Shown here: in pieces, positions 4,444 to 46,899 of the stretch
How the letters are laid out: each line of letters opens with the position of its first letter
How positions within the stretch are numbered: the first letter of the stretch is position 1
NCBI RefSeq assembly: GCF_006345805.1
Contig: NC_043019.1
Location: 9,609,360-9,673,359, forward strand
Direction of reading: 5' to 3'
From: Octopus sinensis
Lineage: Eukaryota
Length of the DNA: 64,000 nt
Made by a program: the position numbers and the translations under genes
Notes under the pieces: generated by a model
Seen by the model: only the letters and a program-made list of their open reading frames with translations
Told to the model about the DNA's origin: nothing
The model's database searches: none

Positions 4444-4892
4444 TATGTGTATATATATATATCATCATCATCCTCATCATCATTGAATGTCCATTGTTCA
4501 TGCTGGCATGGTTTGCTTGGTTTGACCATGGCTGGCAAACTGGAAGGCAGCACCAAACTCCAGTTTGATTTGGCATAGTTGCTACAGCTGGATGCCCTTC
4601 CTACACACATGCACATAAACATGCAGTTTTAATTATTCATATCTATCAGTATACAAATAATTATACATAAATAAAACTATGAGTCAACAGTATATTTTTT
4701 TATGTTTTTTCTTTCCTTTTTTTTTATTGTGAGTCTATGCAAAAGTTGAATACCACTTCCTAATTCGGAACAGGTATATTTCTCAGTGAATCATATTTGC
4801 TGATAAAAAAGACATGAGAAAAAAATATGTCTTTATTGTTAAATGTAACAAAATGCTAATCATGAATAAAAGTGAATTTATTAATTAGCATA

Positions 4893-5811: not shown

Positions 5812-8800
5812 TTTTGCTCCTGATCCTCACATTCCTTTTATTGTTGTTGGATATGTATTTATCAGTTGAAATACATAACTTTTGTAGGAAAATAATATGA
5901 TCCCCAAGAGATGCCTGACCAACCTGCCAGTGCTATCCATGCAATATACAAAGCTAATATGTACCCCCAGCCTGTGCTTTATGGTGTTTTGTGGATATGT
6001 TTTCTTTCATCTGTCACTACACCTTCAATACTGCCTTAGACAGGGGGTGAAAAATGCAAAGCCAAAGCAGCCTCACAACTATTTAGTAGGGATAATCCAT
6101 CTGCATGCTAAAGGGAAATACAGTTATCTATGCATATTCATGTTTTCAAGATATATCCAGCTGGATTATATATTTCTGAAAGTTGGATAATTTGCAGGAA
6201 CTAAAGAAAAACAGAAGTGGACACATTAATTTTGAGGTACTTGAGTCATGGCACTGTTTCCACTATTGTTATGCATCATGTTAGTCTGGATTTGTTTTGC
6301 TGACAGCAAAGAATTTCTGAACTTGCACCTATGACCAACTTGTTCTTTATAGGATTGAAAGATTTTGAGTTGTTCATTTTTGTTGTTGTAATACACACAC
6401 ACACACTCACACACATATGTGTGTGTGTATATGCATGTCTGTATTTGTATGTATGTACACATACTCAAACACAGGAAAATTCTTCAGCAAAGATTATAGA
6501 AACAAGAAATATGAGGAAATATTTAAATTTCAACAATTTAAATATAACTAAAGACACACACATAAAAAGATAAGCATACATATTCAAAATCACACACTCG
6601 TATACATACATGTGTGTGTGTGTAGTATCATGCTGTATATTACTGGTTATGGCATATAACTGGTCTGTTACCAACAATTTCATGCCAACTATTGCACTTG
6701 GAAATATCGATGAATCTGCAGACATTCTGGCTGGAAACACATTGCCTCTTTGATGCTGGAGGTATGCATAGTTCTGGTTGGCTCAATCTTGGGGGAAAGA
6801 ACTGGAGTGAAATGAAGGGAAAAGTTCTAACATTTTCCAAGAAAGATTTTCCCCACCTTTGTGTCAACCATGATGGTTGACACAACCAACATAACAGCTG
6901 TGTGTGTGTGTGTGGTTGTGCATGTACATGTCTATCATTCCTGCATCTGAAAATAGGGAGAACCATATAATCCTCTCAAATTTCCATTCACAAGGGCAGC
7001 ATTCAAATATTTTGTGTTTTGAATTCAAGACAGAATTTTGATTGTGTCCAATATTTTAGAATGGTTACTCTTTGCTAAGCAAGTCTTGCAACACCTACTT
7101 CCATTCAGATATACTCCAAGCTGTTGGACCATATTTTGCAGTGGACTACAAGCAAACAGTAACACTCAATGCCCCCAGCAAGACCATTGTTTAAATCAGT
7201 GAACACTCGTTTATATTAGTAACAGTTTTCTGTTATCAATATATCTTGATGAGATGGGTTAATACATCACATTTGAGTCAATTAAATGTCTATTATAATT
7301 GTGTAATCAAATAAACAATGATGTTGTATGCCATTGAAACAGATGTAGAGGTCACCTGGGCAAATTATGAATTGTATGTGAAATTCTTGCATTTCTTTTT
7401 TTATATCCTATATAAAGGCAGTGCTCCAGCATGACCACAGTCAAGTGACTGAAACAAATAAAAGAATAAAAGAATGTGTACACACTCACAAAACACACAT
7501 GCAATGGGCTTCTTTCAGTATTTGTCTACCAAATTGACTCACATCTATAACCCAAGGTCATAAATGTAGAGGTACATAAAGGTGGTTATGGTAGAGGTGC
7601 ATAGGTGTGATGGCAGATATGAAAGGATGTTGAGAATGATAGTAGATATGTGAGATATGAAAATGGAGTATTGCAAAGGAAAGTGGTTACTAAGGGAACA
7701 GAAAAGAAGTCGTCTATGGAAATAGCATTGGAGAAGAAAGGATAATGAAAATAAGGGATGGAAGTGGTTCCAGTGGGGCTGGAGGTAACTGATTGCACAA
7801 AGAAAGTGGAGCAGAGTAATATGTGTTAATTCTGTCTTCAAGTGATTACAGTTGCTAATTAGTGCCAGATATAGAGTGTTGGGTGAATGAAATGTGGCAA
7901 ATGTTCATGGGGCAGATTGAGTTACAAGCATAAACAGAATGCTTTTCGAATATCATTTTTTTACAATGATGGACAGGGTTTCTGAAGCACATTGAATCGC
8001 CAATCATCTCAGTTCCTTGTCATCTCCTCCATGGCTCAGATCTTGAAATCAGCCTTCCCTACTTTATTCCTGTACAAAAAAACACACACACACACACTCA
8101 TATATGATCATCACCACACACATATATATGTATGAAACGTATGTTTGTATGTATATATGTGTGTGTTTGTGTGTGTGTATGTAAATGTTTACCTATATAT
8201 TTTTAATTATCATTGTTTTAAAGTCTACTTTTCTGTTTGCATGGGTCAGATGGAATTTTTTTGAAGCTATAATACAAGTCACTTGTACAAGGTGCCATGC
8301 AGTGAGACTGACCCAGAGATAACATAGCTGGAAAGCAAGTTTTGTAACTATAGAGTTGCATCTGTGTGTGTGTGTATGTGTGTGTATGTGTGTGTGCACG
8401 CATATCATTATTATCGTTTAACATCTGTCTTCCATGCTGCTGTGGGTTAGACATTTTGGCAGGAGCTGGCAAACCAGAAGACTGCACCAAGCCCTACTAT
8501 CAGCTTTGACATGGTTTCTACATTTAGATGCCCATCCTAACACCAACCATTTTACAGGGTGTACTGGGTACTTTTTATGTAGCACCAGCATGATAAGATA
8601 ACCAGGGAAGTTGCAAGACAGAGATTCCCCAACTGAGAGGGGTTATTGGTATTGAGGGAGCATTTGTGCCAGGGGATGAGTTAAACTATTGCAGAGAGAG
8701 AGAAACAAGTGTCTTGCTGTAGAGGAGATACATGGTCACCCCAGTTGGAGGGAGGGAGGGAGAGAGAGAGAGAGAGAGATGGTGATGATATGTTAGGGCA

Positions 8801-8979
8801 TACCCTAGATGTACAAGGAAGTGAATGGAAATGGAGTGGTAGAGAGAAGAGTGGAAGGAAAGGGGAATGCAGTGAATGGTGAAACACAGGTATATAGGGA
8901 AGCAACAACATGGTAGCAAGGATACAGTTGACAAATACCTCAAGGGAATCTCCAGGGCATTTGGGAACATCTAATTCCT

Positions 8980-9545
8980 ATGTGTCTTTGATGTTTATTG
9001 TTCATGCGAGTCTGTCACTTTCTCCGTTAACTTACTTGTGATTCCACTGCACCTGTTATTTGTTCATAGCTTGCACTGAGTGCAATGAATGGAATTCCGT
9101 CCAACATCTTCCCCACATATTGAGCAGGATCTTTTACCTGACAGAAGGAGAGTGTTAACTGCTTTGTTGCTAACAACAACTTTGGTCTTCACTAGATCAA
9201 CTTTAAGGCCCTTCGGTTCCAGTTTTACTTCCATACATGGAATTTCTTTTCCAATTCTGATATAGGTTGTGCTACAAGAGTGAGGTCCTCTGCATATAGT
9301 AGCTCCTTTGGGTTCCCAGTTTTAAATTACCTTGTAATGACCTGGAAGTCTATGATGAATAAGACGAGACTGAAAACCAAATTCTGGTGAACTCTTACTT
9401 GTACACTAAATTCATGATTGTACTCAAGGCTGAATCTCGTGCAACTGACAGCAACCTTATACATAGATTGTACAGCACTAACAAGCCACTCGTGTCTAAT
9501 CTTGACTTCCTTAGAGCCTACTAGATAGCAGAATGAGGAACTCTG
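8980..9545 (-). pseudogene. Decayed RTE-clade LINE reverse transcriptase fragment
   Basis: Minus-strand translation gives VHQNLVFSLVLFII (cf. GVHQGSVLSPLLF), LLYAEDLTL (YADD-like) and GLKVDLVKTKV, with stops and frameshifts. Confidence 0.75.
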
Positions 9546-9554
9546 CCCACTCAC

Positions 9555-9705
9555 GGAGTGGTTGGCATCAGGAAGGGCATCCAGTTGTAGAAACCATGTC
9601 AAATCAGACTGTAGTCTGGTGCAGCCTTCCAGCTTGCCAGCCCTGGTCAAGCCGTCCAACCCATGCCAGCATCGACAGCAGACACTAAATGATGATGATG
9701 ATGAT
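9555..9705 (+). mobile_element. Representative of an abundant RTE-tail-like repeat ending in (ATG)n
   Basis: tggttggcatcaggaagggcatccag...aacccatgccagcat...ttaaatgatgatg. About 20 related copies on both strands, e.g. 4470, 8420, 12430, 13480, 18170, 23460, 23970, 41520, 46530, 50720, 61683. Confidence 0.8.
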
Positions 9706-10022
9706 ATATACATATATTTTCAGCTTGTCATCCTTCAATACGAAAAAACACCACAATCTTCCATCACAATAACCCACTATTGTCCCTGAAAGTTGATTTT
9801 TTATATTTACTATAGATAGCTTGAAGCTAACTTTCTTCCTACAGTTCTGCCCTCAAAGTGTGGAAGCTTTAGAAAACACATACCGGACTTGGGAGTATGA
9901 TGGTTCTTCTGGGGTTTATTGACCTTGATATTCTTCAGGCACCATTGTTTAGCTAAAGATGGGGTAGCTATTCAGGGTTAGGTCTCTGAGGAACTGTTTG
10001 GTGTTGACAGCTTTATCACATC

Positions 10023-12310: not shown

Positions 12311-12959
12311 CTCATAAATATGGAACAATTTGACCTCAGATATTATCCCATAAACCGGCCTCCTCCAATAAAATATATATGTATACATACATATGTATAG
12401 CACCCATGCAATGCTACATAAAAGCACCCAGCATATTCTGAAAAGTGGTTGGTGTTAGGAATGGCAACCAGCTATAGAAATCGGAGTGGAGTCTAGTGCA
12501 GCTTCCCAGCTTGCAAGCTCTGGTCAAACTGCCCAACTCATGCCAGCATGGACAATAGACGTTAAATGATGATTATGATGATGATAATATATACATACAT
12601 ATATACATATATACACACACACATATATATGGTACTTATTCTATTGGCCCCTTTTGCCAAACCACCAAGTTATGGGTACATAAACACACCAGCACCAGTT
12701 GTCAAGCTGCAGAGGGAGCCAAATACAGACATAAACATACACGTGTGTGTGTGTGTGTGTGTGTGTATGAATGCATGCTTGTATGTATGTATGTATGTAT
12801 ATATATATATATATATATATAATTGTAGTGGCGGTTTTTTTGACTATTTATTAAAATTTTATGTATTGATTAAGTCTTTCCTTGTTTGTTTTGCAAAATA
12901 GTGGTTTTGTCTCTAATAATATTTTATATATATATATATACATATACACACACACATAT

Positions 12960-13115
12960 GACATGCTTCTTTCAGTTTCCGTCTACCAAATCCACTCACA
13001 ATGCTTTGGTCAGCTTGGGGCTATAGTAGAAGACACTTGCCCAAGGTGCCACTTAGTGGGACTGAACCCAAAACCATGTGGTTGGGAAGCAAGCTTCTTA
13101 CCACATAGCCACACC
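12960..13115 (-). mobile_element. tRNA-head SINE 5' part (copy 1 of an exact tandem pair)
   Basis: Minus strand A-box-like TGGCTATGTGG and B-box-like GGTTCAGTCCC, followed by ggcaagtgtcttctactatagc...gtagacggaaactgaaagaagc. Confidence 0.8.
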
Positions 13116-13123
13116 TATATATA

Positions 13124-13197
<74 letters not shown>

Positions 13198-13210
13198 CAC
13201 ACACACATAT

Positions 13211-13366
13211 GACATGCTTCTTTCAGTTTCCGTCTACCAAATCCACTCACAATGCTTTGGTCAGCTTGGGGCTATAGTAGAAGACACTTGCCCAAGGTGC
13301 CACTTAGTGGGACTGAACCCAAAACCATGTGGTTGGGAAGCAAGCTTCTTACCACATAGCCACACC
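13211..13366 (-). mobile_element. tRNA-head SINE 5' part (copy 2, identical, offset 251 bp)
   Basis: Base-for-base identical to 12960-13115 by eye. Confidence 0.8.
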
Positions 13367-13416
<50 letters not shown>

Positions 13417-15939
13417 TACTCACACATACACGTACACACACACACACACATACACACACACATATATATATATATAATTTTAATGTCCATTCTCTATGCT
13501 AGCATATGTTGGATGGTTTGATAGAAGGTGGCCAGCTGGAGAGATGCCCAAGTTCCAGTCGTCTGTTTTGGCATGGTTTCTGCAGCTGGATGTCCTTCCT
13601 AACACTGACCACTTTACAGAATGAACTGGATGCCTTTTACATGGCACCAGCATGGCTGCTTTAACATGGTTTCTGAAGTTGTATGCCATTCTTAATGCCT
13701 ACCACTTTACAGAGTGCACTGTAATATATGTAATATATGTATATTGTTTCCTTACTGCTTATTGTAGCTAACATTGCCAGTACATGATACCTGTTTAGTT
13801 ATTTAAAGCTAGTTGGCCTATGCTGGTGAAGTTTAAGCTTGTATATTAGAAACACGATGATATGTAATGCAGTGCAGATATCAGAATATAAACTGTTGAA
13901 CTCTGCAATTCAATAACCCTTATTGATTCAACAGACTTAAAAACTATCAGGTTATTGCAAGGAGTGTAAATCATATATCTCAGTTAATCATGTTCAAACT
14001 CAACATGTCTAAACTAAGACCATACAGTGTGTGTGTGTGTGTGTGGTGTGTGTGTGTGTGTGTGTGTTATTTTATAATTATTTAAGCTGAGAGGATGGAA
14101 CAAAGTTAAAGTGAAAGAGTGGCTATAAACTGAGGGAAAAAGAAGAGATAAACTAAAGAGAGATAAAATAAACAGGAGAAAAAAAGATCAAAGGAACCGA
14201 GCAAATAATGTTGGAGAGTGAGGGGGGATCGAAAGAAATGACAAAACATAGCATTTAAAGATATCATTAATTAATAATCTATACACTATGCAGATATTGG
14301 ATAGCTGAATGTATATATTTGACTAGCTATTTGTTGATATGCAGTTTGATTCCACTACAAGCTTTCTTTGTGTTTCTGAGCAGATCATCTGTCTATCAGA
14401 AGTTGGCACTACATCATCTAACGAATGGTATCTTTTGTAGACTGTCCAAGAGGAAATTTATCTTTTATCCACTTCCTACCATAAAACTGGACCTAAGTAT
14501 TAATACTTAAAAACTCAAGTGGGAAATATTTGCATTTTACTATACACAAGAAGTAGGTGCTCTGTACTGTGTGAAGGTGGTTAAACAGCCAGCAAAAATG
14601 GGGAAAGATATCAAGCTGGTTTCAAATCCAGGTTGAAGAAAATTTATTCACACATACATGTATGCACGCATACACACATGCACGCACACGCACACACACA
14701 CACACACACACAACACACACACACACACACACACACATACACACACACACACACACCAGCTCCAGGTTAAAATGCTAGATTACACTTTTGTCCTTTTGGT
14801 AGGAAGCTGAATCTTATTGCTGCCTTTAGATACATAGCTGTTGCCTTCATTTCACCTAAGATTATAAAACAGATTCTACAACCTCCTACTTCACATTTGG
14901 TTGGTTAAGTAGTAAGATGAATCATCATTTGGCAATTGATTCATTCAAAAAACCATCTCCTGTTTGCAAGTATAGAAAAAAAAACAACACCATAAAATCA
15001 TTTTTTTAAAATAGATAGAGTGAGAAATTGATAATGTGTACGTGTCACTGATACCAAGATACCTTACCCTCTGGTAGCTCTGTCTCCTTAACTCGGTATT
15101 GATACCACATTATATAGAGAAGTCATTGCTGTAAGCAACAGCTGTTGATCTATGATAGTGATTTTTTTTATATAAGCATAAGGGGATTGGATGCTGTCAT
15201 TCATATCAAGACCTGTATTTGACTGATACTTATTTCTACCCGAAAAGGATACGAGGTGAAACTGAATTCATTTGCATTTAACTTTGGAAGGTGAAAAATT
15301 CTAACTAAAAACCAAAAGATATTTGTTCAACATTCTAATTAATGATTCTACCACTCAACTACCGCTCAGACTGTTAATACTGAGGTTTATTATCTTGCAC
15401 ATTGGTAAGTTCTAATTATAGACCAGAGGTTTTCAGTCTAGATCTGATTACTGAAGTCCAGTTCATCACACTGGTGTCCACCACTCATTGGATATTCTCT
15501 AGCTAAGATCAACTGTATGACAGTCACATGTGTGCATCTGCCTATAAAAATATACTGATAGACAGACACAGAAGTATACACTCGGTTGCCATACAGAATA
15601 CAATTGATCACACTATTTGACACATAAGTGGTTAATAACTTTTTCTCTTTAAAGATCTCAAAAAATTGAACAAAATATTGTGTTGTTGGGTGAAGTGTAT
15701 GCATGTACATTTGGCTATGAGCATTGATAATGATAATGGGAATGAGAAGGATTTTCAGTGACTATAACAAATGCAAAAATAACAACAATGACCACAATTG
15801 GAATGAGGATAGCTATAATGATAATTATGATAACAGTATCGCATATGATGATGATGACATTGACAATTGAGCATACAGGGTGGAATAACAATGTTTTAGC
15901 TGATACACAATCTATCTTTTTTCATTATTCGTGGCACTC

Positions 15940-17414: not shown

Positions 17415-20400
17415 TGTATGTGTGTGTGTGTGTGTGTGCGCATGCGTGCACAAGTATGCATATGTATAAAGGTATTTCAAATATAATACAAGATAAATTT
17501 TTGATTTATTAAAATATCTTCCTGTTGTGTGAAAGATATGTAAAAGCTTTGTGGTTATTTTGATCAATTCCAATTAAGAAGAGGTATAATCTGAGGAATT
17601 AAGAGCTTTCAAAAATTACACCAGTAAGGTAAAAACAGACTGATTATTTGAGACAAGAGGACACCTTTTGATATGTTTCTACCTCAGCTGGTTTCATTAG
17701 CACAGCAGTTGTTTGATTTGTGTCCATCAGGAAAGATATTCAGGCACATGCAAAATGAGCTGAAAATATTTATGGATTACAAGTAATTCGCAAAATTTAG
17801 ATCAAAATGGACACAGGGAAATGACTGGGAGGTCATTGGCATACATATAAGCAATAAAGATGAACTCCCATTGTGAGGAATGGGTGTTCGAAGTATAGCT
17901 ATTTCCAAACTCCGCTGATTATTATTTATTCAATATATAAAGCTATATCAAATACCATACAGACAAATTCTTTTTAACCCTAGCAGCTTGATATTCTATG
18001 CAGTTAATTTGGGAAAGAAACTGGGTACATCTACTCTTAGGAATGGTCAACAAACCCTGAAATGGTCTATCAGAAGACACTCCACCTCTTTACTTCATTA
18101 ATCGCATTGGAAAACTGTGTTTATATTCTTAGTATTTCTGTCACAGGCTTTCTAATCATTATCATCCACATCGTCATCTAACCTCCGCTTTCCATGTTGG
18201 CATGGGTTGGACGGTTTGAAAGGAACTGGCTAGGCAGAAGACTACATCATGCTTACTGTCTGTTTTGGTACGGGTTTTACAGCTGGATTCCCTTCCAAAT
18301 GCCAACCACTTTACAATGTGGACTGTTGGCTTTTTATGTGACACCAGCACTGGCAAGGTCATCAAGTAACTTGCAAGACAAAAATCCTTTGAGAGGAGCG
18401 GGGGCTTGGAGGAGGTGGTCTTGTACCAGATGATGGAAGGTTAGAGTGTAACAGAGGGACAGAAACAACTGTCTTACCATAGAGGAAATACATGCTTACC
18501 TGGTGAAAGAGAGAGAGAGAGTGATCAAGACTGAGGCCAGTAACAGGTGTGTTGCTGTAGAGAAGATACATGGTTAACCAGTCAGAGGGATAGAGCAAGA
18601 GGAAGAGAGAGAGTGCAAGAGAAAGAGAGTGAGTGGAAGAGAGCATTCTTGTGAAGTCTCTACGCCCTATTCATGCACCTTGGCAATACCCTACCATTCA
18701 TATTCTGACCCCATATCTTGAGGGCATGTCCTTCCACTTTGCCAGTACTTACCTCTCCCTTGCTTTTCCTTAACATCCCATTTATATTCTGATCACCATT
18801 CATTGTGAGCATGCCCTGGCACTTTGCCACCATCTCTCTCCTGCTCTCTTGCTTTCTAATATTTAAATTTATTTCTATCCTTCTGATTTGTACTCTATTA
18901 TACATGAATTATATACATTGTAATTAATAACAAGCTGTCAAAAGCACAAATATGCAAATTAAACCATCCAGCACACTGTGAGCCTAATTTATGACTGTTA
19001 TATTACAGCTGAATATCTTGTGCTATATATTATGGCATGAAATTGGATGCGTTCTCTGAGGAGCACTCAAAGCTCAACAAACAGTGATACTGTCTATCAG
19101 GAGATTCCACAAGTCATTTTTCTGAGTATCAAAAGCTTACAAAAATATATATTTACATTATAAATGTTTCGCTCACAGCCATATTATCTAATATTTAAAT
19201 TAATTTCAATCCTTTTGATTCATGTTGTGCTGTGCATCAAACATATTGATAGACAAACAGACAACACCACTACTGGTTCTTCTAAATGTGAGTAGCTATG
19301 TGACTCCTCAACAACAAGTCTGCTCTGCACCATATCCTTCTCTAATACTTTATCCTCCATCTCCTAACATAAAGTAATAGTGATAACCACACTATTATTA
19401 GTGGCACTTTCCGTAAAGTGGTTAAGATTGGAAAGTGCAGCCAGCCATAGAAATCATGCCAAAGCAGACACTGGAGCACAGTGCAGTCCTCGGATCCATC
19501 AGATCCTGTCAAACTATGCAACCCATTCCAGCATGGAATATGGACATTAAATCTTCAGCTTGAAGTCGAAGATTTTAAACTAGCAGAGACAACTCTAGAA
19601 TATTACCTGAGGAAACACAAGATCTCATTATGCAAACAAACAGTTGCCTAATCAAATACCTGCATTTCTGGAGAACCATGTTGGGTGGAAAAATTGTAGT
19701 GATTTAAAAAATAACTGTCCAAATGTACTCCTCCTTGTTGACTCCACTTTCTTCAATATATATATATATGTGTGTATGTGTGTGTGAATGAGTGTACATC
19801 TGTAACAGCTCAGATGAATTTCCATGCATGTGTTTCAAGTTTTGTACCTTCAATGTCATTGGTTTATAATTTAACACCCCACCCAGGCCAGCAACACCAT
19901 TGCCACAGTCACAATTATTTTGCATGCTTACTGCTAACACCAACACCACAGTCATCGATACTTCTCCCTGGTGCTACCTTTTGCTGTTTCCAAACTTCAG
20001 GCACATGTTTCATAGCTACTGCTACCACCACCACCCTCAGTATCCATACTTTCAGCAGTTCCCCTCTTTATTATGACCATTGACAGCTTCTCCGCCATAC
20101 AAACACTAAACCCCCTTCATGACTTTATACATTACCATTATTGATATCATCAATGCCCACTTATACCACTTCTGGCACAATCACTAGCACCAACATCACC
20201 ACCCATTTGGGGTGCCCTTATATATATAATCCACACTACTGGTTTCCCTCAACCTATCCAGCCTTACCCGTTTCGTTTCTCCCCACCGCAAAGTAACTCT
20301 CTATATATGTTTTTCTACCTAGACTTTCTATATTATTAGTCTCATTAGATATTATAATTAGTGCCTGAGATGCCCACTTGCAAAACAGATCATACTTTGT

Positions 20401-23185: not shown

Positions 23186-24244
23186 GGCACAAGGACAGAG
23201 ATGGCAGTCAAAGGAACACAGGGATAATAAATATATTGAGAAACAAAGTTAGGATGGCAGATGTGAGAGGGTGATCAGAGGAAAGAGGTATTTTGTGGAA
23301 AATAAAGAGATAAGGGATGATGTTGAGGATGGGGGGCAGGTTAAAGACAGAGCGATCCTAATCTTGCAGGCTTGCAGGTGCTGGTGTCGCATAAAAAGCA
23401 CCTGTGCTGGTGCCCCAGAAGAGCACCGATGCTGGTGCTACTTGAAAGAACACAGTACAGTTTGTAAAGTGGTTGGCACTAGGAAGGACATCAAGCCATA
23501 GAAAACCATGCCTAGGTAGACATGGGGCCTGAGCGGCTCTTCAGCTGACCAGCTCCTGTCAGACTGTCCAACCCACACCAGTATTGGAAATGAACATTAA
23601 ATGATGATGATGATGACAAATATATATGTATGTTCTCTTCCTTTCTTCCTCTCCGTCTCTCCCTCTTCCTCTCTCTAGTTGGGTAACCATGTACTTCTTC
23701 TACAGCAAGACATCTGTTTCTTTCTCTCTGTCACACCCTAACCCTTCATCATCTGATACAAGATCATCCCCTTCAATGTTCCCTCCCCTCCCAAAGATTC
23801 TTTGTCTTGCAAAGTTACTTGGTGACCCTGCCAGTGCAGGTACCACTTAAAAAAAACACCCAGTCCATACAGTAAGGTAGCTGGCATTTGGAAGGGCATC
23901 CAGTGGTAAATACGATGACCTTAACTGTTTGAGTGGCATGTAAAAAGTACTCAACCCATTCTGCAGAGCAGTTGGTGTTAGGAAGGGCATCCAGCTGTAG
24001 AAACCCTGCCAAAACAGACACTGAAGCATTGTGCTGGCTCCTGCCTGGCCAGCTCCTGTCAAACCGTCCACTCCATGGCAGCATGGAAGAAGGATATTAA
24101 ATGATGATGATGTATGTATGTGCACAACTATTATATATCTTATACATATATATATATATACACACACACGCATATACGTACGTTATATATATATATATAT
24201 ATACATACATAAATATACACACACACATATACACAACACACATG

Positions 24245-24282
<38 letters not shown>

Positions 24283-24692
24283 TATATATTGTTATTGCTT
24301 ATCCTTCACCTAACTTGGAACCTGCAATTTGTTTGGATCTAGAGTCTATAGATGGCAGTGCAATAGTTGTAGTGAGTGTGTATCTGCGTGTGACCTTGAT
24401 GACTCGTGTATTCAGTTAGCTATTTGTGAATGTATGCGTAACTGAAGAACAAAGCCGTATTTACTTTAGAGAGTATTTTTTTTTGTACGCTGTTTGTACA
24501 CTATAGCACTATCACCAACCTGACCTTGGTGCTTTCACTTTTAAGTACCTGATACTCTTGAATCTGAAAATTTTATACATATATATATATATATCGTCAT
24601 CATCATCATTTAATGTATCCTCCATGCTAGCATGGGTAGGTATATATATATATATATATGCATATATGTATGTATATATATGTATACATATG

Positions 24693-25618: not shown

Positions 25619-25752
25619 ATATTTCGGAATGGTCATATTTAAACGTACTATATATATATATATATACATAACACATGCTAGCATGGAAAGCGGACGTTAA
25701 ATGATGATGATGATGATGCATATATACATACATATATATATATATACATGCA

Positions 25753-25882: not shown

Positions 25883-25918
<36 letters not shown>

Positions 25919-25920
25919 AT
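25420..25920. repeat. Compound (TA)n/(CATA)n microsatellite, left flank of the PLE
   Basis: Read directly from sequence. Confidence 0.9.
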
Positions 25921-26069
25921 GTGAAATAGAAAGATGAATAATCTTGTAGTAGATTAATCAAAAGTTTAACCGATACCTTAGTAGCAAAAATCACCGCAGT
26001 AAACAGCACGGTTGGAGGTACAACCATATGGTGTTGCAACCGTGCGTTGGTGCGGATAATTGAAATTAA

Positions 26070-26663
26070 AACATTATTGGTGAATTGAAGAAATGGAGCT
26101 GAACGCAGATTGAACAGAAATCGTTTTATTTCATTCTACACGTGTTTCGAAAGGCACAAATTACCAAAATCCGATTGAATAATGGGACCATATTGTGTCT
26201 TTCTCTTCAGGAAGAAAATAGGAAATCCGTTGGAAACAGAACAGAGGCGGAGCAAAAACAAATCGAACTATGCTCCTAAGAGCCCATGGCGAAACTGTTT
26301 ATCAGTGTATGTTGAGAACCGGTGGCTGAAGAATTTAACGGGTCAGGCATCGGTCAATCATGTGGGTGAGGGTGTGTGGGTGTTCTTTGTGACCGAGAAT
26401 AAAGTTCTGACTATTTAAAGAATATTGGATGTTTTATAAGGGGCGAGAAAAAATCTACTTAGAGACGTGTGTGTGTGTGTATACTGTTCTATATATGTGT
26501 GTGTTGGCGTAGGGGTAGAAAACATTTTTTGTGTACGTGTGTGCGTTTGATCGTTCGGCTGTCAGTGGCTACTGCCGCGAGAACCGTTGGGTGGCAGAAA
26601 AAAATATATATATTATGTTTTATGTGTGTGTGTGTTCATCTAAGCCTGCCTTGTCAAGGAAAC
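26070..26663 (-). repeat. Left arm of inverted repeat (sense 3' pseudo-LTR)
   Basis: Reverse complement of 27210-27801. Differences found by eye: two substitutions, one A-run indel, one GT-unit indel and a 1-bp indel at the inner end. Confidence 0.95.
26127..26220 (-). ncRNA. Type I hammerhead ribozyme (left pseudo-LTR)
   Basis: Exact reverse complement of 27651-27744. Confidence 0.85.
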
Positions 26664-26797
26664 CCCCCGCTGTGAAAAAACCAAGCCCCGTTTGTCTAAC
26701 AGGAGTAATTCCCCTTGCAGTGGTTAATCGTAGATATCTTAAAGGCTATTTCAGAATTTGTTACCAAGGGCTATGGGTGCCGGTATTATTATAAACG

Positions 26798-27250
26798 CTA
26801 TTTAAAAGCCAGATAAGTGTAACGCCGCCAATGGGGGCATCGAAAAGCCGACTGTAAAAGCCCGTTTACCATCCGGCCTCTGGCAAACAAAATATGGAAG
26901 AGTTCGGAGACACAAAGGTTGCACTGCCTTCTGCCCCTATCAAATGGGAGGGCCACCGACAAAATTGACCATTCCAGCCTGTAGCTTAAGTTCGTATCCT
27001 TCAGTCGCCATATTAGCTTACTGAGTCCCGTGGTCTGGCGCTTGTTCATGTCCCGAAAAGTTGCGTAATGGTTGGAGACACGCAAAAACAATCTTGAGGA
27101 TGAGGCCCCTACATAAGTGAAGACATCTGAGTCCGTGTAAACCTTGCATTGGTAGACGGCGTTTTTGATCTTGGAGTTCGCCGACGTGAATCTTATTCTG
27201 CTAGGATTAGTTTCTTGACAAGGCAGGCTTAGATGAACACACACACACAT
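26798..27250 (-). CDS. Penelope-type GIY-YIG endonuclease domain (150 aa from in-frame ATG; no RT)
   Basis: NAVYQCKV..TYVGAS (GIY-YIG motif), RVSNH (catalytic Arg), LSKLIWRLKD, CNLCVSE (catalytic Glu), MVN (Asn) and CPH. No stops. The ATG at 27250 is supplied by the inverted arm, so expression is unproven. Confidence 0.75.
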   Translation of the reverse strand: MCVCVHLSLPCQETNPSRIRFTSANSKIKNAVYQCKVYTDSDVFTYVGASSSRLFLRVSNHYATFRDMNKRQTTGLSKLIWRLKDTNLSYRLEWSILSVALPFDRGRRQCNLCVSELFHILFARGRMVNGLLQSAFRCPHWRRYTYLAFK

Positions 27251-27432
27251 AAAACATAATATATATATTTTTTTTCTGCCACCCAACGGTTCTCGCGGCA
27301 GTAGCCACTGACAGCCGAACGATCAAACGCACACACGTACACAAAAAATGTTTTGTACCCCTACGCCAACACACACATATATAGAACAGTATACACACAC
27401 ACACGTCTCTAAGTAGATTTTTTCTCGCCCCT

Positions 27433-27466
27433 TATAAAACATCCAATATTCCTTAAATAGTCAGAA
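27433..27466 (+). promoter_or_regulatory. Candidate TATA box plus initiator in the pseudo-LTR (mirror copy 26432-26438 on minus)
   Basis: TATAAAA at 27433-27439 and Inr-like TCAG with its A at 27463, 30 nt downstream. AATAAA at 27741-27746, just after the ribozyme cleavage site. Confidence 0.45.
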
Positions 27467-27650
27467 CTTTATTCTCGGTCACAAAGAACACCCACACACC
27501 CTCACCCACATGATTGACCGATGCCTGACCCGTTAAATTCTTCAGCCACCGGTTCTCAACATACACTGATAAACAGTTTCGCCATGGGCTCTTAGGAGCA
27601 TAGTTCGATTTGTTTTTGCTCCGCCTCTGTTCTGTTTCCAACGGATTTCC

Positions 27651-27744
27651 TATTTTCTTCCTGAAGAGAAAGACACAATATGGTCCCATTATTCAATCGG
27701 ATTTTGGTAATTTGTGCCTTTCGAAACACGTGTAGAATGAAATA
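27651..27744 (+). ncRNA. Type I hammerhead ribozyme (right pseudo-LTR)
   Basis: Stem I tattttcttc/gaatgaaata; core CTGAAGA 27661-27667; stem II GAAAGACACAA/TTGTGCCTTTC (10 of 11 bp); GAAA 27723-27726; palindromic stem III ACACGTGT; GUA triplet with predicted cleavage after 27734. Confidence 0.85.
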
Positions 27745-27799
27745 AAACGATTTCTGTTCAATCTGCGTTCAGCTCCATTTCTTCAATTCACCAATAATG

Positions 27800-27841
<42 letters not shown>

Positions 27842-43100: not shown

Positions 43101-43277
43101 GCAACCCTCTAACTCATTGGATCCTATTGAACTGACCAACTCATGCTAGCATGGAAAATGGTGATTACATGATGACGATGTGTGTGTGTGTGTGTGCATG
43201 TAGGCATATATGTGCATGTTTGTGTATGTATATAACATGAATATATATAAACATATCTCTCTATGTATGTTTGTGTG

Positions 43278-43320
<43 letters not shown>

Positions 43321-43395
43321 ATATATATCATCATCGTTTAACGTCCGTTTTCCATGCTAGCATGGGTTGGACGATTTTGACTGAGGGCTGGCGAA

Positions 43396-45720: not shown

Positions 45721-46899
45721 ACGAGATCATTCCTGCCTCGCCTTTCACAGTGAAGATATTAGCCATCGCTATAGCCATTTTTCACCATTTCTGAAACTGC
45801 CACGCTACACAACCATCATCATCTTCACCACACCTATTGCCATCATTTTCAGCCCAACACATTTTTTTTCTGCCTCATATTGTTTTATCTATATTGGTTT
45901 CCAACCAGCCACTTCAGAACATGTTCACTTTATTATTAATAGCTATACTCACTTCAGAATACCTATTCTATTCTATTAGAATACCACTCTGCAATTTTAA
46001 CACCACTACATTCAAGCACAACAATCTGCTAAATGTAGCCAAATTTCCCTAATATCACACTTTGCTGTCTTAAAAAAGGGGAAGATGCATTCAACAGCTG
46101 AACTGCCTTTGAACATATTTCAGCTCAATCAAGGTTGACTTATGGCTACGCAATACCATTGTGACTATTCACCATCCTACCAGTTCGCTACAACCATCAT
46201 TCACCACCATCACTTAACAATAAACAAACAAACAAATGAGCTTTGAGCTGGTGTGGAGCTTCATCAACAGAGTCTTTATGTAGTCACTCAACTTGTAAGA
46301 AATAGCAACTAAATTTACATGACACCTTACTAGTTTCAAGTTGACAATACACTACTATGTACCTGTTTATGATGATACGCTAACAGTTGTTCACCAAGTG
46401 TTGTCCTGAAACTATCACACCACAGTCTCCTAAGTCCATGACCATTACACTCAGTTGATGGTTGCTGACATATCTGCCAGCATGCATTTGTAGTCTGCCA
46501 ACATGCATCAGTAGTCTTATTAAATGATGATGATGATCATCATCATCATCCATTTTCCATGCTGGCATGGGTTGAACAGTTCGACTGAGATCTGGTAAGC
46601 CATGGAGGCTGCACCAGGTTCCAGTCTGATCTGGCAGTGTTTCTACAGCTGGATGCCCTTCCTAACACCAACCACTTCGAGAGTGTAGTGGGTGCTTTTT
46701 ATGTGCCATCGGCACAGGGGCCAGATGGGACTGGCAATGACCACGATTGGTTAGTGCTTTTTATGTGCCACCGGCACAGGGATCACAACTACAATTTCTA
46801 TTTGATTTTGGTTTTGATGTACTTGACTCAACAGGTCTTCTCAAGCACAGCATGTTGCCCTACGATCCAAGGTACTTTTGAGTGGGCTGGTTATGTGAC

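What the first reader, a model, noticed from the sequence alone, without database searches (positions are those of the whole stretch)
25921..27801. Young Penelope-like cassette: inverted pseudo-LTRs, two hammerheads, endonuclease only
Seen: ~590-bp arms about 99% identical in inverted orientation, each with a complete hammerhead, TATA box and AATAAA. They enclose an uninterrupted GIY-YIG domain with no RT, inserted in (TA)n, with ATAATGT at both outer ends (25916-25922 and 27794-27800). Known: PLEs carry GIY-YIG nucleases and pseudo-LTRs with hammerheads, and 5'-truncated copies can have inverted pseudo-LTRs. Inference: a very recent insertion from an active family, formed by template switching. 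The unit may be a one-off truncation or a non-autonomous ribozyme-plus-nuclease element that propagates as such.
Basis: partly seen in the sequence, partly recalled or inferred. Interest (0 to 1): 0.85.

Follow-up and report, generated by a model that had tools for sequence, protein, structure and literature searches.

The report
Truncated head-to-head Penelope-like element insertion
This is a young but dead copy of a known kind of retrotransposon, a Hydra-clade Penelope-like element of octopuses. It landed in a (TA)n microsatellite as two truncated copies joined head to head, which is an ordinary outcome for this element class and not a new kind of mobile unit.

Summary
Two inverted arms (26070-26658 and 27211/27215-27801) differ by 2 substitutions and 2 small indels. 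Each arm carries one complete type-I hammerhead, found by my own motif scan but not by Rfam. Between the arms lie 137 open codons of a GIY-YIG-type nuclease that run to the natural stop codon. No reverse transcriptase (RT) is present, and both outer ends abut (TA)n.

The closest proteins come from Octopus sinensis and Argonauta. There the same nuclease follows a YRDD reverse transcriptase in one reading frame. The family motifs match the published Hydra clade of Penelope-like elements (PLEs), which targets (TA)n.

The 147 bp at 25923-26069, which the right arm lacks, is element sequence. It is a conserved 3' "tail", present in O. sinensis copies.

The best reading is one integration event with two converging reverse transcriptions. 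One began at the long 3' site and the other at the short 3' site, and the two cDNAs joined at a GGAAAC microhomology. The "pseudo-LTRs" are simply the overlap of two 5'-truncated copies.

The two hammerheads lie on opposite strands, so no single transcript can be cut to unit length. An O. sinensis composite of the same family has a different junction. A propagating ribozyme-plus-nuclease unit is therefore unlikely.

ATAATGT is not a demonstrable target-site duplication, and the TATA and AATAAA strings occur at chance frequency.

This is a new member of a known kind, of modest interest.

The parts
25886..25922 (.). Left flank: the (TA)n microsatellite that served as target
   Evidence: Sequence read directly. 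Related copies in O. sinensis abut (TA)n in the same way.
25923..26069 (-). Tail of copy A: the element's 3' extension between the short (site 1) and long (site 2) 3' termini. It is absent from the right arm.
   Evidence: It lies outside the inverted repeat. It aligns at 74-75% with O. sinensis elements downstream of their hammerheads (L004 10311-10446, L007, L008b) and at 94% with L008 3457-3524. All of these end at the homologous position against (TA)n.
26070..26658 (-). Left arm: the distal 3' UTR of copy A, including its hammerhead
   Evidence: Inverted repeat with 27215-27801; 2 substitutions and 2 indels.
26131..26216 (-). Hammerhead ribozyme of copy A: type I, long helix II, helix III reduced to A-U plus the palindromic loop CACGUG. 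Cleavage after 26137.
   Evidence: Own scan. Covariation across 6 family sequences: 87.5% of cells paired, against 33-50% for slid controls, and 8 pairs changed on both sides.
26659..26797 (-). Proximal 3' UTR of copy A; the unique, non-repeated part
   Evidence: It lies between the stop codon and the inner end of the arm. The distance from stop codon to hammerhead, 588 nt, matches the 579-612 nt seen in relatives.
26798..27214 (-). Remnant of the element ORF: the last 137-138 codons plus the TAG stop. This is the complete GIY-YIG-type endonuclease core, cut off just upstream in the linker (E-T-N-P...).
   Evidence: Open frame. There are 2611 homologues at E<=1e-3. Identity is 65-68% to the O. 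sinensis nuclease ORFs, which end at the same stop codon. AF2 model pLDDT 88.7; the best PDB fold matches are T4 EndoII, Hpy188I and I-TevI.
27210..27214 (.). Junction of the two copies, GTTTC on the + strand. Both parent sequences read GGAAAC here, so this is microhomology with one G lost.
   Evidence: The arm parent is read at 26658-26664. The nuclease parent is inferred from O. sinensis relatives (...TCGGAAACCAATCC).
27215..27801 (+). Right arm: copy B, a 5'-truncated copy consisting only of distal 3' UTR and hammerhead. It ends at the short 3' terminus (site 1), without a tail.
   Evidence: The same terminus is used by L005, by the L004 inverted piece and by L008a.
27655..27740 (+). Hammerhead ribozyme of copy B; cleavage after 27734
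27802..27829 (.). Right flank: (TA)n, followed by (TATG)n

Best explanation
The region 25923-27801 is a single, recent, non-functional insertion of a Hydra-clade Penelope-like retrotransposon (an octopod subfamily) into a (TA)n microsatellite. It consists of two 5'-truncated copies joined head to head.

- Copy A (minus strand, about 1.29 kb) holds the last 137 codons of the RT-EN reading frame (the whole GIY-YIG nuclease core), the 3' UTR, the hammerhead and a 147-nt tail. It ends at the long 3' terminus (site 2).
- Copy B (plus strand, about 0.59 kb) holds only distal 3' UTR and hammerhead. It ends at the short 3' terminus (site 1), 67 nt past the ribozyme cleavage site.

The likely mechanism is inferred, not shown. 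The element's nuclease cut both strands of the (TA)n target. Each 3'-OH primed reverse transcription of element RNA, one at site 2 and the other at site 1. The two inward-growing cDNAs stopped early, annealed through a GGAAAC microhomology, and were filled in. This is twin priming as described for L1.

The 'inverted pseudo-LTRs' are therefore just the stretch that both copies share. The nuclease frame is open because the insertion is young, not because the unit is functional. It has no native start codon and no RT. Its two ribozymes face opposite ways, so no transcript contains two sense hammerheads.
For: **Anatomy.**

**Hammerheads.** They are real and family-conserved, with compensatory changes in helices I and II and a palindromic helix III loop that is maintained (CACGUG, CAUAUG, CAUGUG).

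**Nuclease family.**
- 2611 homologues.
- The nearest are O. sinensis XP_029649382.1, XP_029632940.1 and XP_036366068.1, and an Argonauta hians protein.
- XP_036366068.1 and the L004 ORFs carry a YRDD RT upstream of the same nuclease.
- A profile of 31 full-length relatives hits a solved reverse transcriptase, retron Ec83 RT, at E = 0.0065. Its consensus shows RxRW, ADKT, CNCRxKxxC, CxLC..E, LN and CxH.
- These are the features PMC8557442 lists for the Hydra clade, together with canonical hammerheads and (TA)n insertion.

**Tail is element sequence.** The termini are shared with O. sinensis copies L004, L005, L007 and L008.

**Head-to-head composites recur.** They have different junctions: L004 has a 42-bp inverted piece, L008 3457-3726 belongs to the same family at 92-95% identity, and Argonauta L009 638-965 is a fourth case. 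In each, one copy ends at the short site and the other runs on.

**Literature.**
- An inverted 5'-truncated copy next to PLE insertions, and a tail at one end only, are described in PMC8557442.
- A PLE protein cleaves and extends both DNA strands and initiates at two internal RNA sites that define the tail (PMC11167929).
- Dual hammerheads on opposite strands, 100-700 bp apart, were already noted in PMC4209133.

**Junction microhomology.**
Against: - No other copy from the source genome could be examined, so the uniqueness of the 27210 junction is inferred, not shown.
- Pfam and PDB sequence searches do not recognise the nuclease, and the Foldseek E-values are weak (0.12-1.8).
- This octopod subfamily lacks the cysteines of the CxCX5C linker listed for the Hydra clade.
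- The tail is 136-147 nt here, against the 30-40 nt described for other PLEs.
- Twin priming is inferred from the end points. The nuclease-side parent sequence at the junction is inferred from relatives that are only about 70% identical at the DNA level.
- The site-1/site-2 pairing rests on four composites.
Confidence: 0.8

Rival explanations
1. Template switch or snap-back. After copying RNA up to the nuclease region, the polymerase jumped onto its own nascent cDNA through the GAAAC microhomology and copied it back, creating the right arm.
For: Microhomology at the junction. The arms are nearly identical.
Against: A copy-back on the nascent cDNA should run on through the 147-nt tail to the cDNA's 5' end. 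The right arm instead stops at 27801. That is the short terminus used independently as a 3' end by L005, by the L004 inverted piece and by L008a.
Confidence: 0.15
2. A non-autonomous 'hammerhead - nuclease - hammerhead' element that is transcribed, processed by its ribozymes and mobilised as a unit, in the manner of a retrozyme.
For: The nuclease frame is intact and two complete ribozymes are present. Animal retrozymes are proposed to derive from PLE pLTRs (bioRxiv 10.64898/2026.07.22.740005).
Against: - The ribozymes are on opposite strands, so any transcript carries one sense and one antisense copy and cannot be cut to unit length.
- The ORF has lost its start and begins mid-linker.
- There is no second copy in the window.
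- The same-family composite in O. sinensis has different break points.
- Single direct copies without inverted arms exist (L005, L007).
Confidence: 0.04
3. Two separate insertions of an active family into the same (TA)n hot spot at slightly different times.
For: The family targets (TA)n. The two arms differ at 2 sites.
Against: No (TA)n remains between the two copies. Their 5' ends meet at a microhomology. The same head-to-head arrangement recurs at other loci and in another family.
Confidence: 0.06
4. Assembly artefact: a fold-back chimera of reads.
For: Long, near-identical inverted repeats are a known source of misassembly. PMC8557442 also notes this for PLEs.
Against: The arms are not identical (2 substitutions, 2 indels). 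The structure is not a true palindrome, because a unique 552-bp centre and a 147-bp tail occur on one side only. Homologous architectures exist in independent assemblies.
Confidence: 0.03
5. A DNA transposon or fold-back element with about 590-bp terminal inverted repeats that encodes a nuclease.
For: Superficial shape only.
Against: The left repeat is not terminal. In relatives the ORF is the 3' end of an RT-nuclease fusion. The arms carry PLE-type hammerheads. Related copies occur without inverted arms.
Confidence: 0.01

Closest known systems
Hydra clade of C-terminal EN+ Penelope-like elements (Craig, Yushenova, Rodriguez & Arkhipova 2021, PMC8557442)
   Same: - The nuclease has no CCHH motif.
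- CxxC and CxH flank the conserved E and N.
- Relatives show the RW(K) and DKT motifs and a divergent RT motif B.
- A canonical-core hammerhead lies downstream of the ORF.
- Insertion is into (TA)n.
- Mollusca is among the reported host phyla.
   Different: - The octopod subfamily has replaced every cysteine of the CxCX5C linker (NPNRIRFLSSNSK).
- It carries a long N-rich low-complexity linker.
- Its unit is about 3.65 kb (L004 6799-10446), against the 'generally <3 kb' reported.
- Its tail is 136-147 nt.
- The window copy itself has no RT.
Generic PLE insertion architecture: an inverted 5'-truncated copy next to the 5' end, and a tail at one end (PMC8557442 Fig. 2; Evgen'ev & Arkhipova 2005, as cited there)
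   Same: Head-to-head inverted copies, heavy 5' truncation, and an extension present at only one end of the composite.
   Different: Here the 'main' copy is itself truncated down to the nuclease. The tail is about four times longer than the 30-40 bp described.
Two internal RT start sites and cleavage of both strands in Poseidon of Anolis (Frangieh et al. 2024, PMC11167929)
   Same: Two alternative 3' termini that define a tail, an AT-rich target, both DNA strands usable as primers, and a hammerhead close to the termini.
   Different: The clade is different, and the sites here lie 147 nt apart rather than 30-40 nt. In L004 site 2 lies upstream of the ORF start, not inside the ORF. The termini resemble the TA-rich target, whereas the Anolis study saw no homology.
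Minimal dimeric PLE hammerheads (Cervera & de la Pena 2014, PMC4209133)
   Same: Type I, a long helix II, a short helix I, a helix III reduced to a small palindromic element, and dual copies on opposite strands a few hundred bp apart.
   Different: Helix II here is 11 bp and encloses a 33-nt insert. That is probably why no Rfam hammerhead model scores it.
L1 twin priming (Ostertag & Kazazian 2001; from my own knowledge)
   Same: A 5' inversion generated by priming from both strands of the target, with the inversion junction resolved at a microhomology.
   Different: In L1 the inverted segment is a different, more 5' part of the RNA. Here both copies start in the same 3' region, so they overlap and form inverted repeats.

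Membership tests
Penelope-like elements (EN+) | A reverse transcriptase of the PLE/telomerase-related type in the same ORF as the nuclease | tested here: inconclusive
   The window copy has no RT. Relatives (P0151, L004 7053-9056, P0029) have a YRDD RT upstream of the same nuclease. The family profile hits a solved RT, retron Ec83, at E = 0.0065. Local Pfam gives no hit. No RT phylogeny was run.
Penelope-like elements (EN+) | A GIY-YIG endonuclease domain | tested here: met
   The motifs (V)Y20, Y33-x-G35, R44, H48, E103 and N116 are conserved in 95 homologues. The AF2 model has pLDDT 88.7. The three best distinct PDB folds are all GIY-YIG nucleases (T4 EndoII, Hpy188I, I-TevI; TM up to 0.60), but E is 0.12-1.8. 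Pfam and PDB sequence searches are negative.
Penelope-like elements (EN+) | A hammerhead ribozyme motif in the terminal repeat region | tested here: met
   Rfam is negative.
Penelope-like elements (EN+) | Insertion architecture: 5' truncation, an adjacent inverted copy, a tail at one end | tested here: met
   compared with the description in PMC8557442.
Hydra clade of PLEs | The nuclease lacks the CCHH motif. CxxC and CxH flank the conserved E and N. | tested here: met
   The window nuclease reads C97-N-L-C100, E103, N116, C125-P-H127. These columns are at least 90% conserved in 95 homologues.
Hydra clade of PLEs | A CxCX5C linker upstream of GIY | tested here: not met
   The motif is present in wider relatives (P0016 'CNCRNRQSC'; A8 consensus CNCRxKxxC). 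In the octopod subfamily the aligned positions read NPNRIRFLSSNSK, with no cysteine. I read this as a derived loss within the clade. The window copy is truncated 3 codons upstream of this stretch.
Hydra clade of PLEs | RT-side motifs: RWK present, and DKG changed to DKT | tested here: met
   Tested in relatives only. L004 has 'QSDKTRN' and the A8 consensus has 'RxRW' and 'ADKT'. This cannot be tested in the window copy.
Hydra clade of PLEs | Insertion into (TA)n | tested here: met
   The window has (TA)n at both ends. So do L004, L005, L007 and L008a.
Hydra clade of PLEs | Short elements (generally <3 kb) | tested here: not met
   The nearest full-length-like unit, L004 6799-10446, is about 3.65 kb. 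Most other relatives sit on 2.2-3 kb contigs and encode proteins of about 700 aa. The paper gives this as a tendency, not a definition.
Retrozymes (non-autonomous hammerhead elements) | Two sense hammerheads on one transcript that delimit a unit excised and circularised as RNA | tested here: not met
   The two hammerheads are on opposite strands.

The most novel reading that the evidence does not exclude
In this octopod PLE family the two ends of a head-to-head composite are not equivalent. In all four composites seen (window, L004, L008a, Argonauta L009), one copy ends at the short 3' site and the partner at the long one. This would mean that the element's (probably dimeric) RNP primes the two target strands at two different, fixed RNA positions 136-147 nt apart. 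The PLE 'tail' would then be a strand-specific signature of a concerted two-strand integration. A further point follows from the loss of every cysteine in the linker: (TA)n targeting would not need the Zn-linker that has been proposed to guide it.
Probability: 0.25. Interest if true: 0.5.

Novelty: new member of a known kind. Interest (0 to 1): 0.25.

Why it matters
On its own this is one more dead retrotransposon copy. It has three uses.

1. It shows that a Hydra-clade PLE family has been active very recently in an octopod genome. The clade was described mainly from cnidarians.
2. It provides a clean, almost unmutated example of a head-to-head PLE composite, with both 3' termini, the tail and the inversion junction all readable. 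That bears on the still unresolved integration mechanism of PLEs.
3. It documents a hammerhead variant that current Rfam models miss. Genome annotations that rely on Rfam will under-count these ribozymes.

Tried and rejected
- **Rfam.** Searches at the gathering score and at E<=10 gave only microsatellite-driven miRNA noise and no hammerhead.
- **MFE folding.** Folding the ribozyme region alone gives z = -0.09. It recovers only helix II and is uninformative.
- **Sequence searches with the nuclease.** Pfam, PDB by sequence and the word-indexed protein search were all negative. A profile search with the 7-sequence subfamily alignment returned only two distant Logan proteins. Their contigs (L001-L003) have no hammerhead and almost no DNA similarity.
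- **Exact-protein look-ups.** Look-ups of window ORFs (the 78-aa arm ORF and the 162-aa ORF) to find the source genome found nothing on record.
- **Collection scans.** Scans of viral contigs and metagenome contigs for relatives found none. Two alignments were too diverse to make search patterns.
- **The tail as start of the next ORF.** I considered that the tail encodes the start of the next tandem ORF. It contains an ATG at 26030 that is open to the tail end. In the L004 relative, however, the ORF start lies downstream of site 2, so I dropped the idea.
- **ATAATGT as a target-site duplication.** I considered and rejected this as not demonstrable. The right copy is element sequence, mirrored at 26071-26077. 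The left copy straddles the tail end. The same-family O. sinensis composite shows TTTTGT at its left end and lacks the motif at its right end.
- **TATA and AATAAA as functional signals.** They occur at chance frequency and are not conserved.
Full report
**1. What is in the sequence**

The inverted repeat is real. Region 26070-26658 pairs with 27215-27801; BLAST extends the match to 26067-26661 against 27211-27804. There are 596 aligned columns at 98.8% identity. The only differences are two substitutions, a 2-bp (GT)n length change and a 1-bp A-run change. The window holds no other copy. Every other repeat pair in the window is 92% identical or less, so this is the youngest repeat present.

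That start includes 147 bp (25923-26069) with no counterpart in the right arm. Both outer ends touch (TA)n.

**2. The hammerheads**

Rfam reports no hammerhead at the gathering score or at E<=10. A descriptor I wrote required CUGANGA, a helix II closing onto GAAA, A15.1-U16.1, H17 and at least 7 of 8 helix I pairs.

- It finds exactly two sites in 64 kb, one per arm. One is on the + strand in the right arm (cleavage after 27734). The other is on the - strand in the left arm (cleavage after 26137).
- It finds none in 100 composition-matched random windows.

The motif is type I. Helix II has 11 bp and encloses a 33-nt insert. Helix III consists only of the A-U pair plus the palindrome CACGUG.

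Five homologous ribozymes from Octopus sinensis loci align with it.

- On this alignment 87.5% of cells pair, against 33-50% when partners are slid by one to three columns.
- Eight pairs change on both sides, against 0-2 in the slid controls.
- The core nucleotides are invariant.
- The helix III loop stays self-complementary (CACGUG, CAUAUG, CAUGUG).

The structure was derived from one of these six sequences, which favours it somewhat. This architecture matches what PMC4209133 describes for metazoan PLEs: a long helix II, a short helix I and a small palindromic helix III that implies action as a dimer. That paper also notes dual motifs on opposite strands 100-700 bp apart.

**3. The protein**

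On the minus strand, 27211->26801 is open for 137 codons. Pfam, PDB sequence searches and the word-indexed search do not recognise it. An exhaustive phmmer search finds 2611 relatives at E<=1e-3.

Ninety-five of them share the conserved residues Y20, Y33-x-G35, R44, H48, C97-x-x-C100, E103, N116 and C125-x-H127. An AlphaFold model built on this alignment is confident (pLDDT 88.7). Its best PDB fold matches are T4 EndoII, Hpy188I and I-TevI. All three are GIY-YIG nucleases, though the E-values are weak (0.12-1.8).

The nearest named relatives are O. sinensis XP_029649382.1, XP_029632940.1 and XP_036366068.1, and an Argonauta hians protein. The source is therefore most likely an octopod. The window was not found in the collections I could query.

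In XP_036366068.1 and in the O. sinensis locus L004, the same nuclease follows a YRDD polymerase domain and an N-rich linker. A profile of 31 full-length relatives, mostly about 700-aa proteins on 2.2-3 kb contigs, weakly hits a solved reverse transcriptase (E = 0.0065). Its consensus contains RxRW, ADKT, CNCRxKxxC, CxLC..E, LN and CxH.

These are the traits PMC8557442 lists for the Hydra clade of Penelope-like elements, together with canonical hammerheads and near-universal insertion into (TA)n. One listed trait is missing in the octopod subfamily: the linker cysteines are all replaced (NPNRIRFLSSNSK).

The window ORF ends at the same stop codon as the O. sinensis ORFs. It begins three codons upstream of that linker stretch. 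It is therefore the intact 3' end of an RT-EN frame, not a separate nuclease gene.

**4. The extra 147 bp is a conserved tail**

Window 25900-26213 aligns at 74-75% with sequence downstream of the nuclease in three O. sinensis elements (L004 10168-10465, L007 7410-7720, L008 7331-7642). The tail end alone aligns at 94% with L008 3457-3524.

All these copies end at the homologous position directly against (TA)n. I call this terminus site 2.

The right arm of the window ends 147 nt earlier, at site 1. Site 1 is also the 3' end of the direct copy in L005, of the 42-bp inverted piece in L004 and of the direct piece in L008 3540-3726.

Two alternative 3' ends that define a tail are a known PLE signature. 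They have been traced to two internal start sites of reverse transcription (PMC8557442; PMC11167929). Here the tail is 136-147 nt rather than 30-40 nt.

In L004 the motif CCATTTCAATAAA occurs both at the tail end and at the 5' start of the unit. This shows the tandem-derived, permuted nature of the template.

**5. How the composite arose**

The structure reads as (TA)n | copy A on the minus strand (tail, hammerhead, UTR, nuclease) | junction | copy B on the plus strand (UTR, hammerhead) | (TA)n. The 5' ends face each other and the 3' ends face outward.

Three other head-to-head composites were seen.

- L004 has a full-length-like copy plus a 42-bp inverted piece that is 100% identical to its partner.
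- L008 3457-3726 belongs to the same family as the window (92-95% identity) and has different break points.
- Argonauta L009 638-965 is an unrelated PLE with 99% identical arms.

In each, one partner ends at the short site and the other runs on.

At the window junction both parents read GGAAAC and the composite reads GAAAC. The nuclease-side parent is inferred from relatives.

It stops instead at an independently used terminus. I therefore favour two primings on opposite strands followed by microhomology annealing of the two cDNA ends. This fits the in vitro finding that a PLE protein cleaves and extends both strands. The mechanism is inferred, not shown.

**6. Age**

The two arms differ by two substitutions in about 589 bp (K about 0.0034). 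PMC13282606 uses a copy-to-consensus scale for O. vulgaris in which JC 0.09 corresponds to about 25 My. On that scale the age is of the order of half a million years.

This is a rough inference. It assumes an Octopus-like rate, a single template and no gene conversion. The same paper reports 31 recently active PLE families in O. vulgaris, so a young PLE copy in an octopus is expected.

**7.

- *ATAATGT.* The 7-mer is present at both stated places. The right copy is element sequence, mirrored at 26071-26077. The left copy straddles the tail end. The same-family O. sinensis composite has TTTTGT at its left end and lacks the motif at its right end. With (TA)n on both sides a target-site duplication cannot be established. 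A 7-bp duplication combined with microhomology priming is not excluded.
- *TATAAA and AATAAA.* Both occur on the sense strand of each arm. They occur about 0.5 times per 590 nt by chance here, and they are absent at the corresponding place in relatives.
- *A propagating ribozyme-plus-nuclease unit.* This is unlikely. The ribozymes are on opposite strands, the ORF has lost its start, related composites have different junctions, and plain direct copies exist.
- *An assembly artefact.* This is unlikely because the arms differ and the structure is asymmetric. Long reads should still confirm it.

**8. Verdict**

This is a well-preserved, recent, dead-on-arrival head-to-head insertion of an octopod Hydra-clade Penelope-like element. 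It is a new member of a known kind.

The points of some interest are secondary:

- the long conserved tail;
- the recurrent pairing of a short and a long terminus in composites;
- continued (TA)n targeting although every cysteine of the linker has been lost;
- a hammerhead variant that Rfam does not detect.

Noticed in passing
window 4451-4608, 9555-9717, 12416-12600, 18155-18375, 23934-24126, 46524-46718, 61683-61851; also 12925-13210 / 13176-13465: The window is packed with 130-290-bp dispersed, SINE-like repeats at 70-92% identity. Several also match O. sinensis locus L004 (15610-16320) at 79-85%.
   Followed up: partly
window 24600-24640 and 25678-25719: A shared motif (TCCATGCTAGCATGG next to (ATC/ATG)n) sits beside the microsatellites on both sides of 25 kb. 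It looks like the tail of a SINE-like repeat. The (TA)n that received the PLE may belong to such a repeat, since 25670-25871 matches 24074-24289 and 43138-43368.
   Followed up: no
L004 9074-9559, L007 6400-6810, L008 6342-6752; window 27170-27211: The octopod subfamily has replaced all cysteines of the Hydra-clade CxCX5C linker (NPNRIRFLSSNSK). Every copy examined still abuts (TA)n, so the Zn-linker may not be what directs (TA)n targeting.
   Followed up: partly
L008 3457-3726 (O. sinensis CM016874.1): This is a 270-bp composite of the same family as the window element (92-95% identity). It comprises about 50 bp of inverted tail end joined to about 190 bp of hammerhead-to-site-1 sequence, with (TA)n on both sides. 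It shows that the family is shared with, or present in, O. sinensis.
   Followed up: yes
L009 638-965 (Argonauta hians BAAFZT010000061.1): Another PLE family forms a head-to-head pair with 146-bp arms that are 99% identical, each with a CUGACGA...GAAAC hammerhead. The left copy ends against (TA)n and the right copy runs on further.
   Followed up: partly
L004 6799-10446 and 10502 onward: This is a near full-length O. sinensis element, with one frameshift between the RT ORF (7053-9056) and the EN ORF (9074-9559). A second element, 77% identical, starts immediately after the intervening (TA)n, so the two form a chain of insertions in one microsatellite. NCBI names the fragments 'myb-like protein I', 'dyrk1' and the like, which are low-complexity artefacts.
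   Followed up: partly
window 27248-27286: The nuclease frame runs on by chance for 25 codons into the antisense right arm and picks up an in-frame ATG (27250-27248). A 150-aa nuclease-only product is therefore formally possible, but there is no evidence of expression.
   Followed up: no
window 62400-64000: A microsatellite tract of (TA)n/(TATG)n type, more than 1.5 kb long, lies at the end of the window.
   Followed up: no
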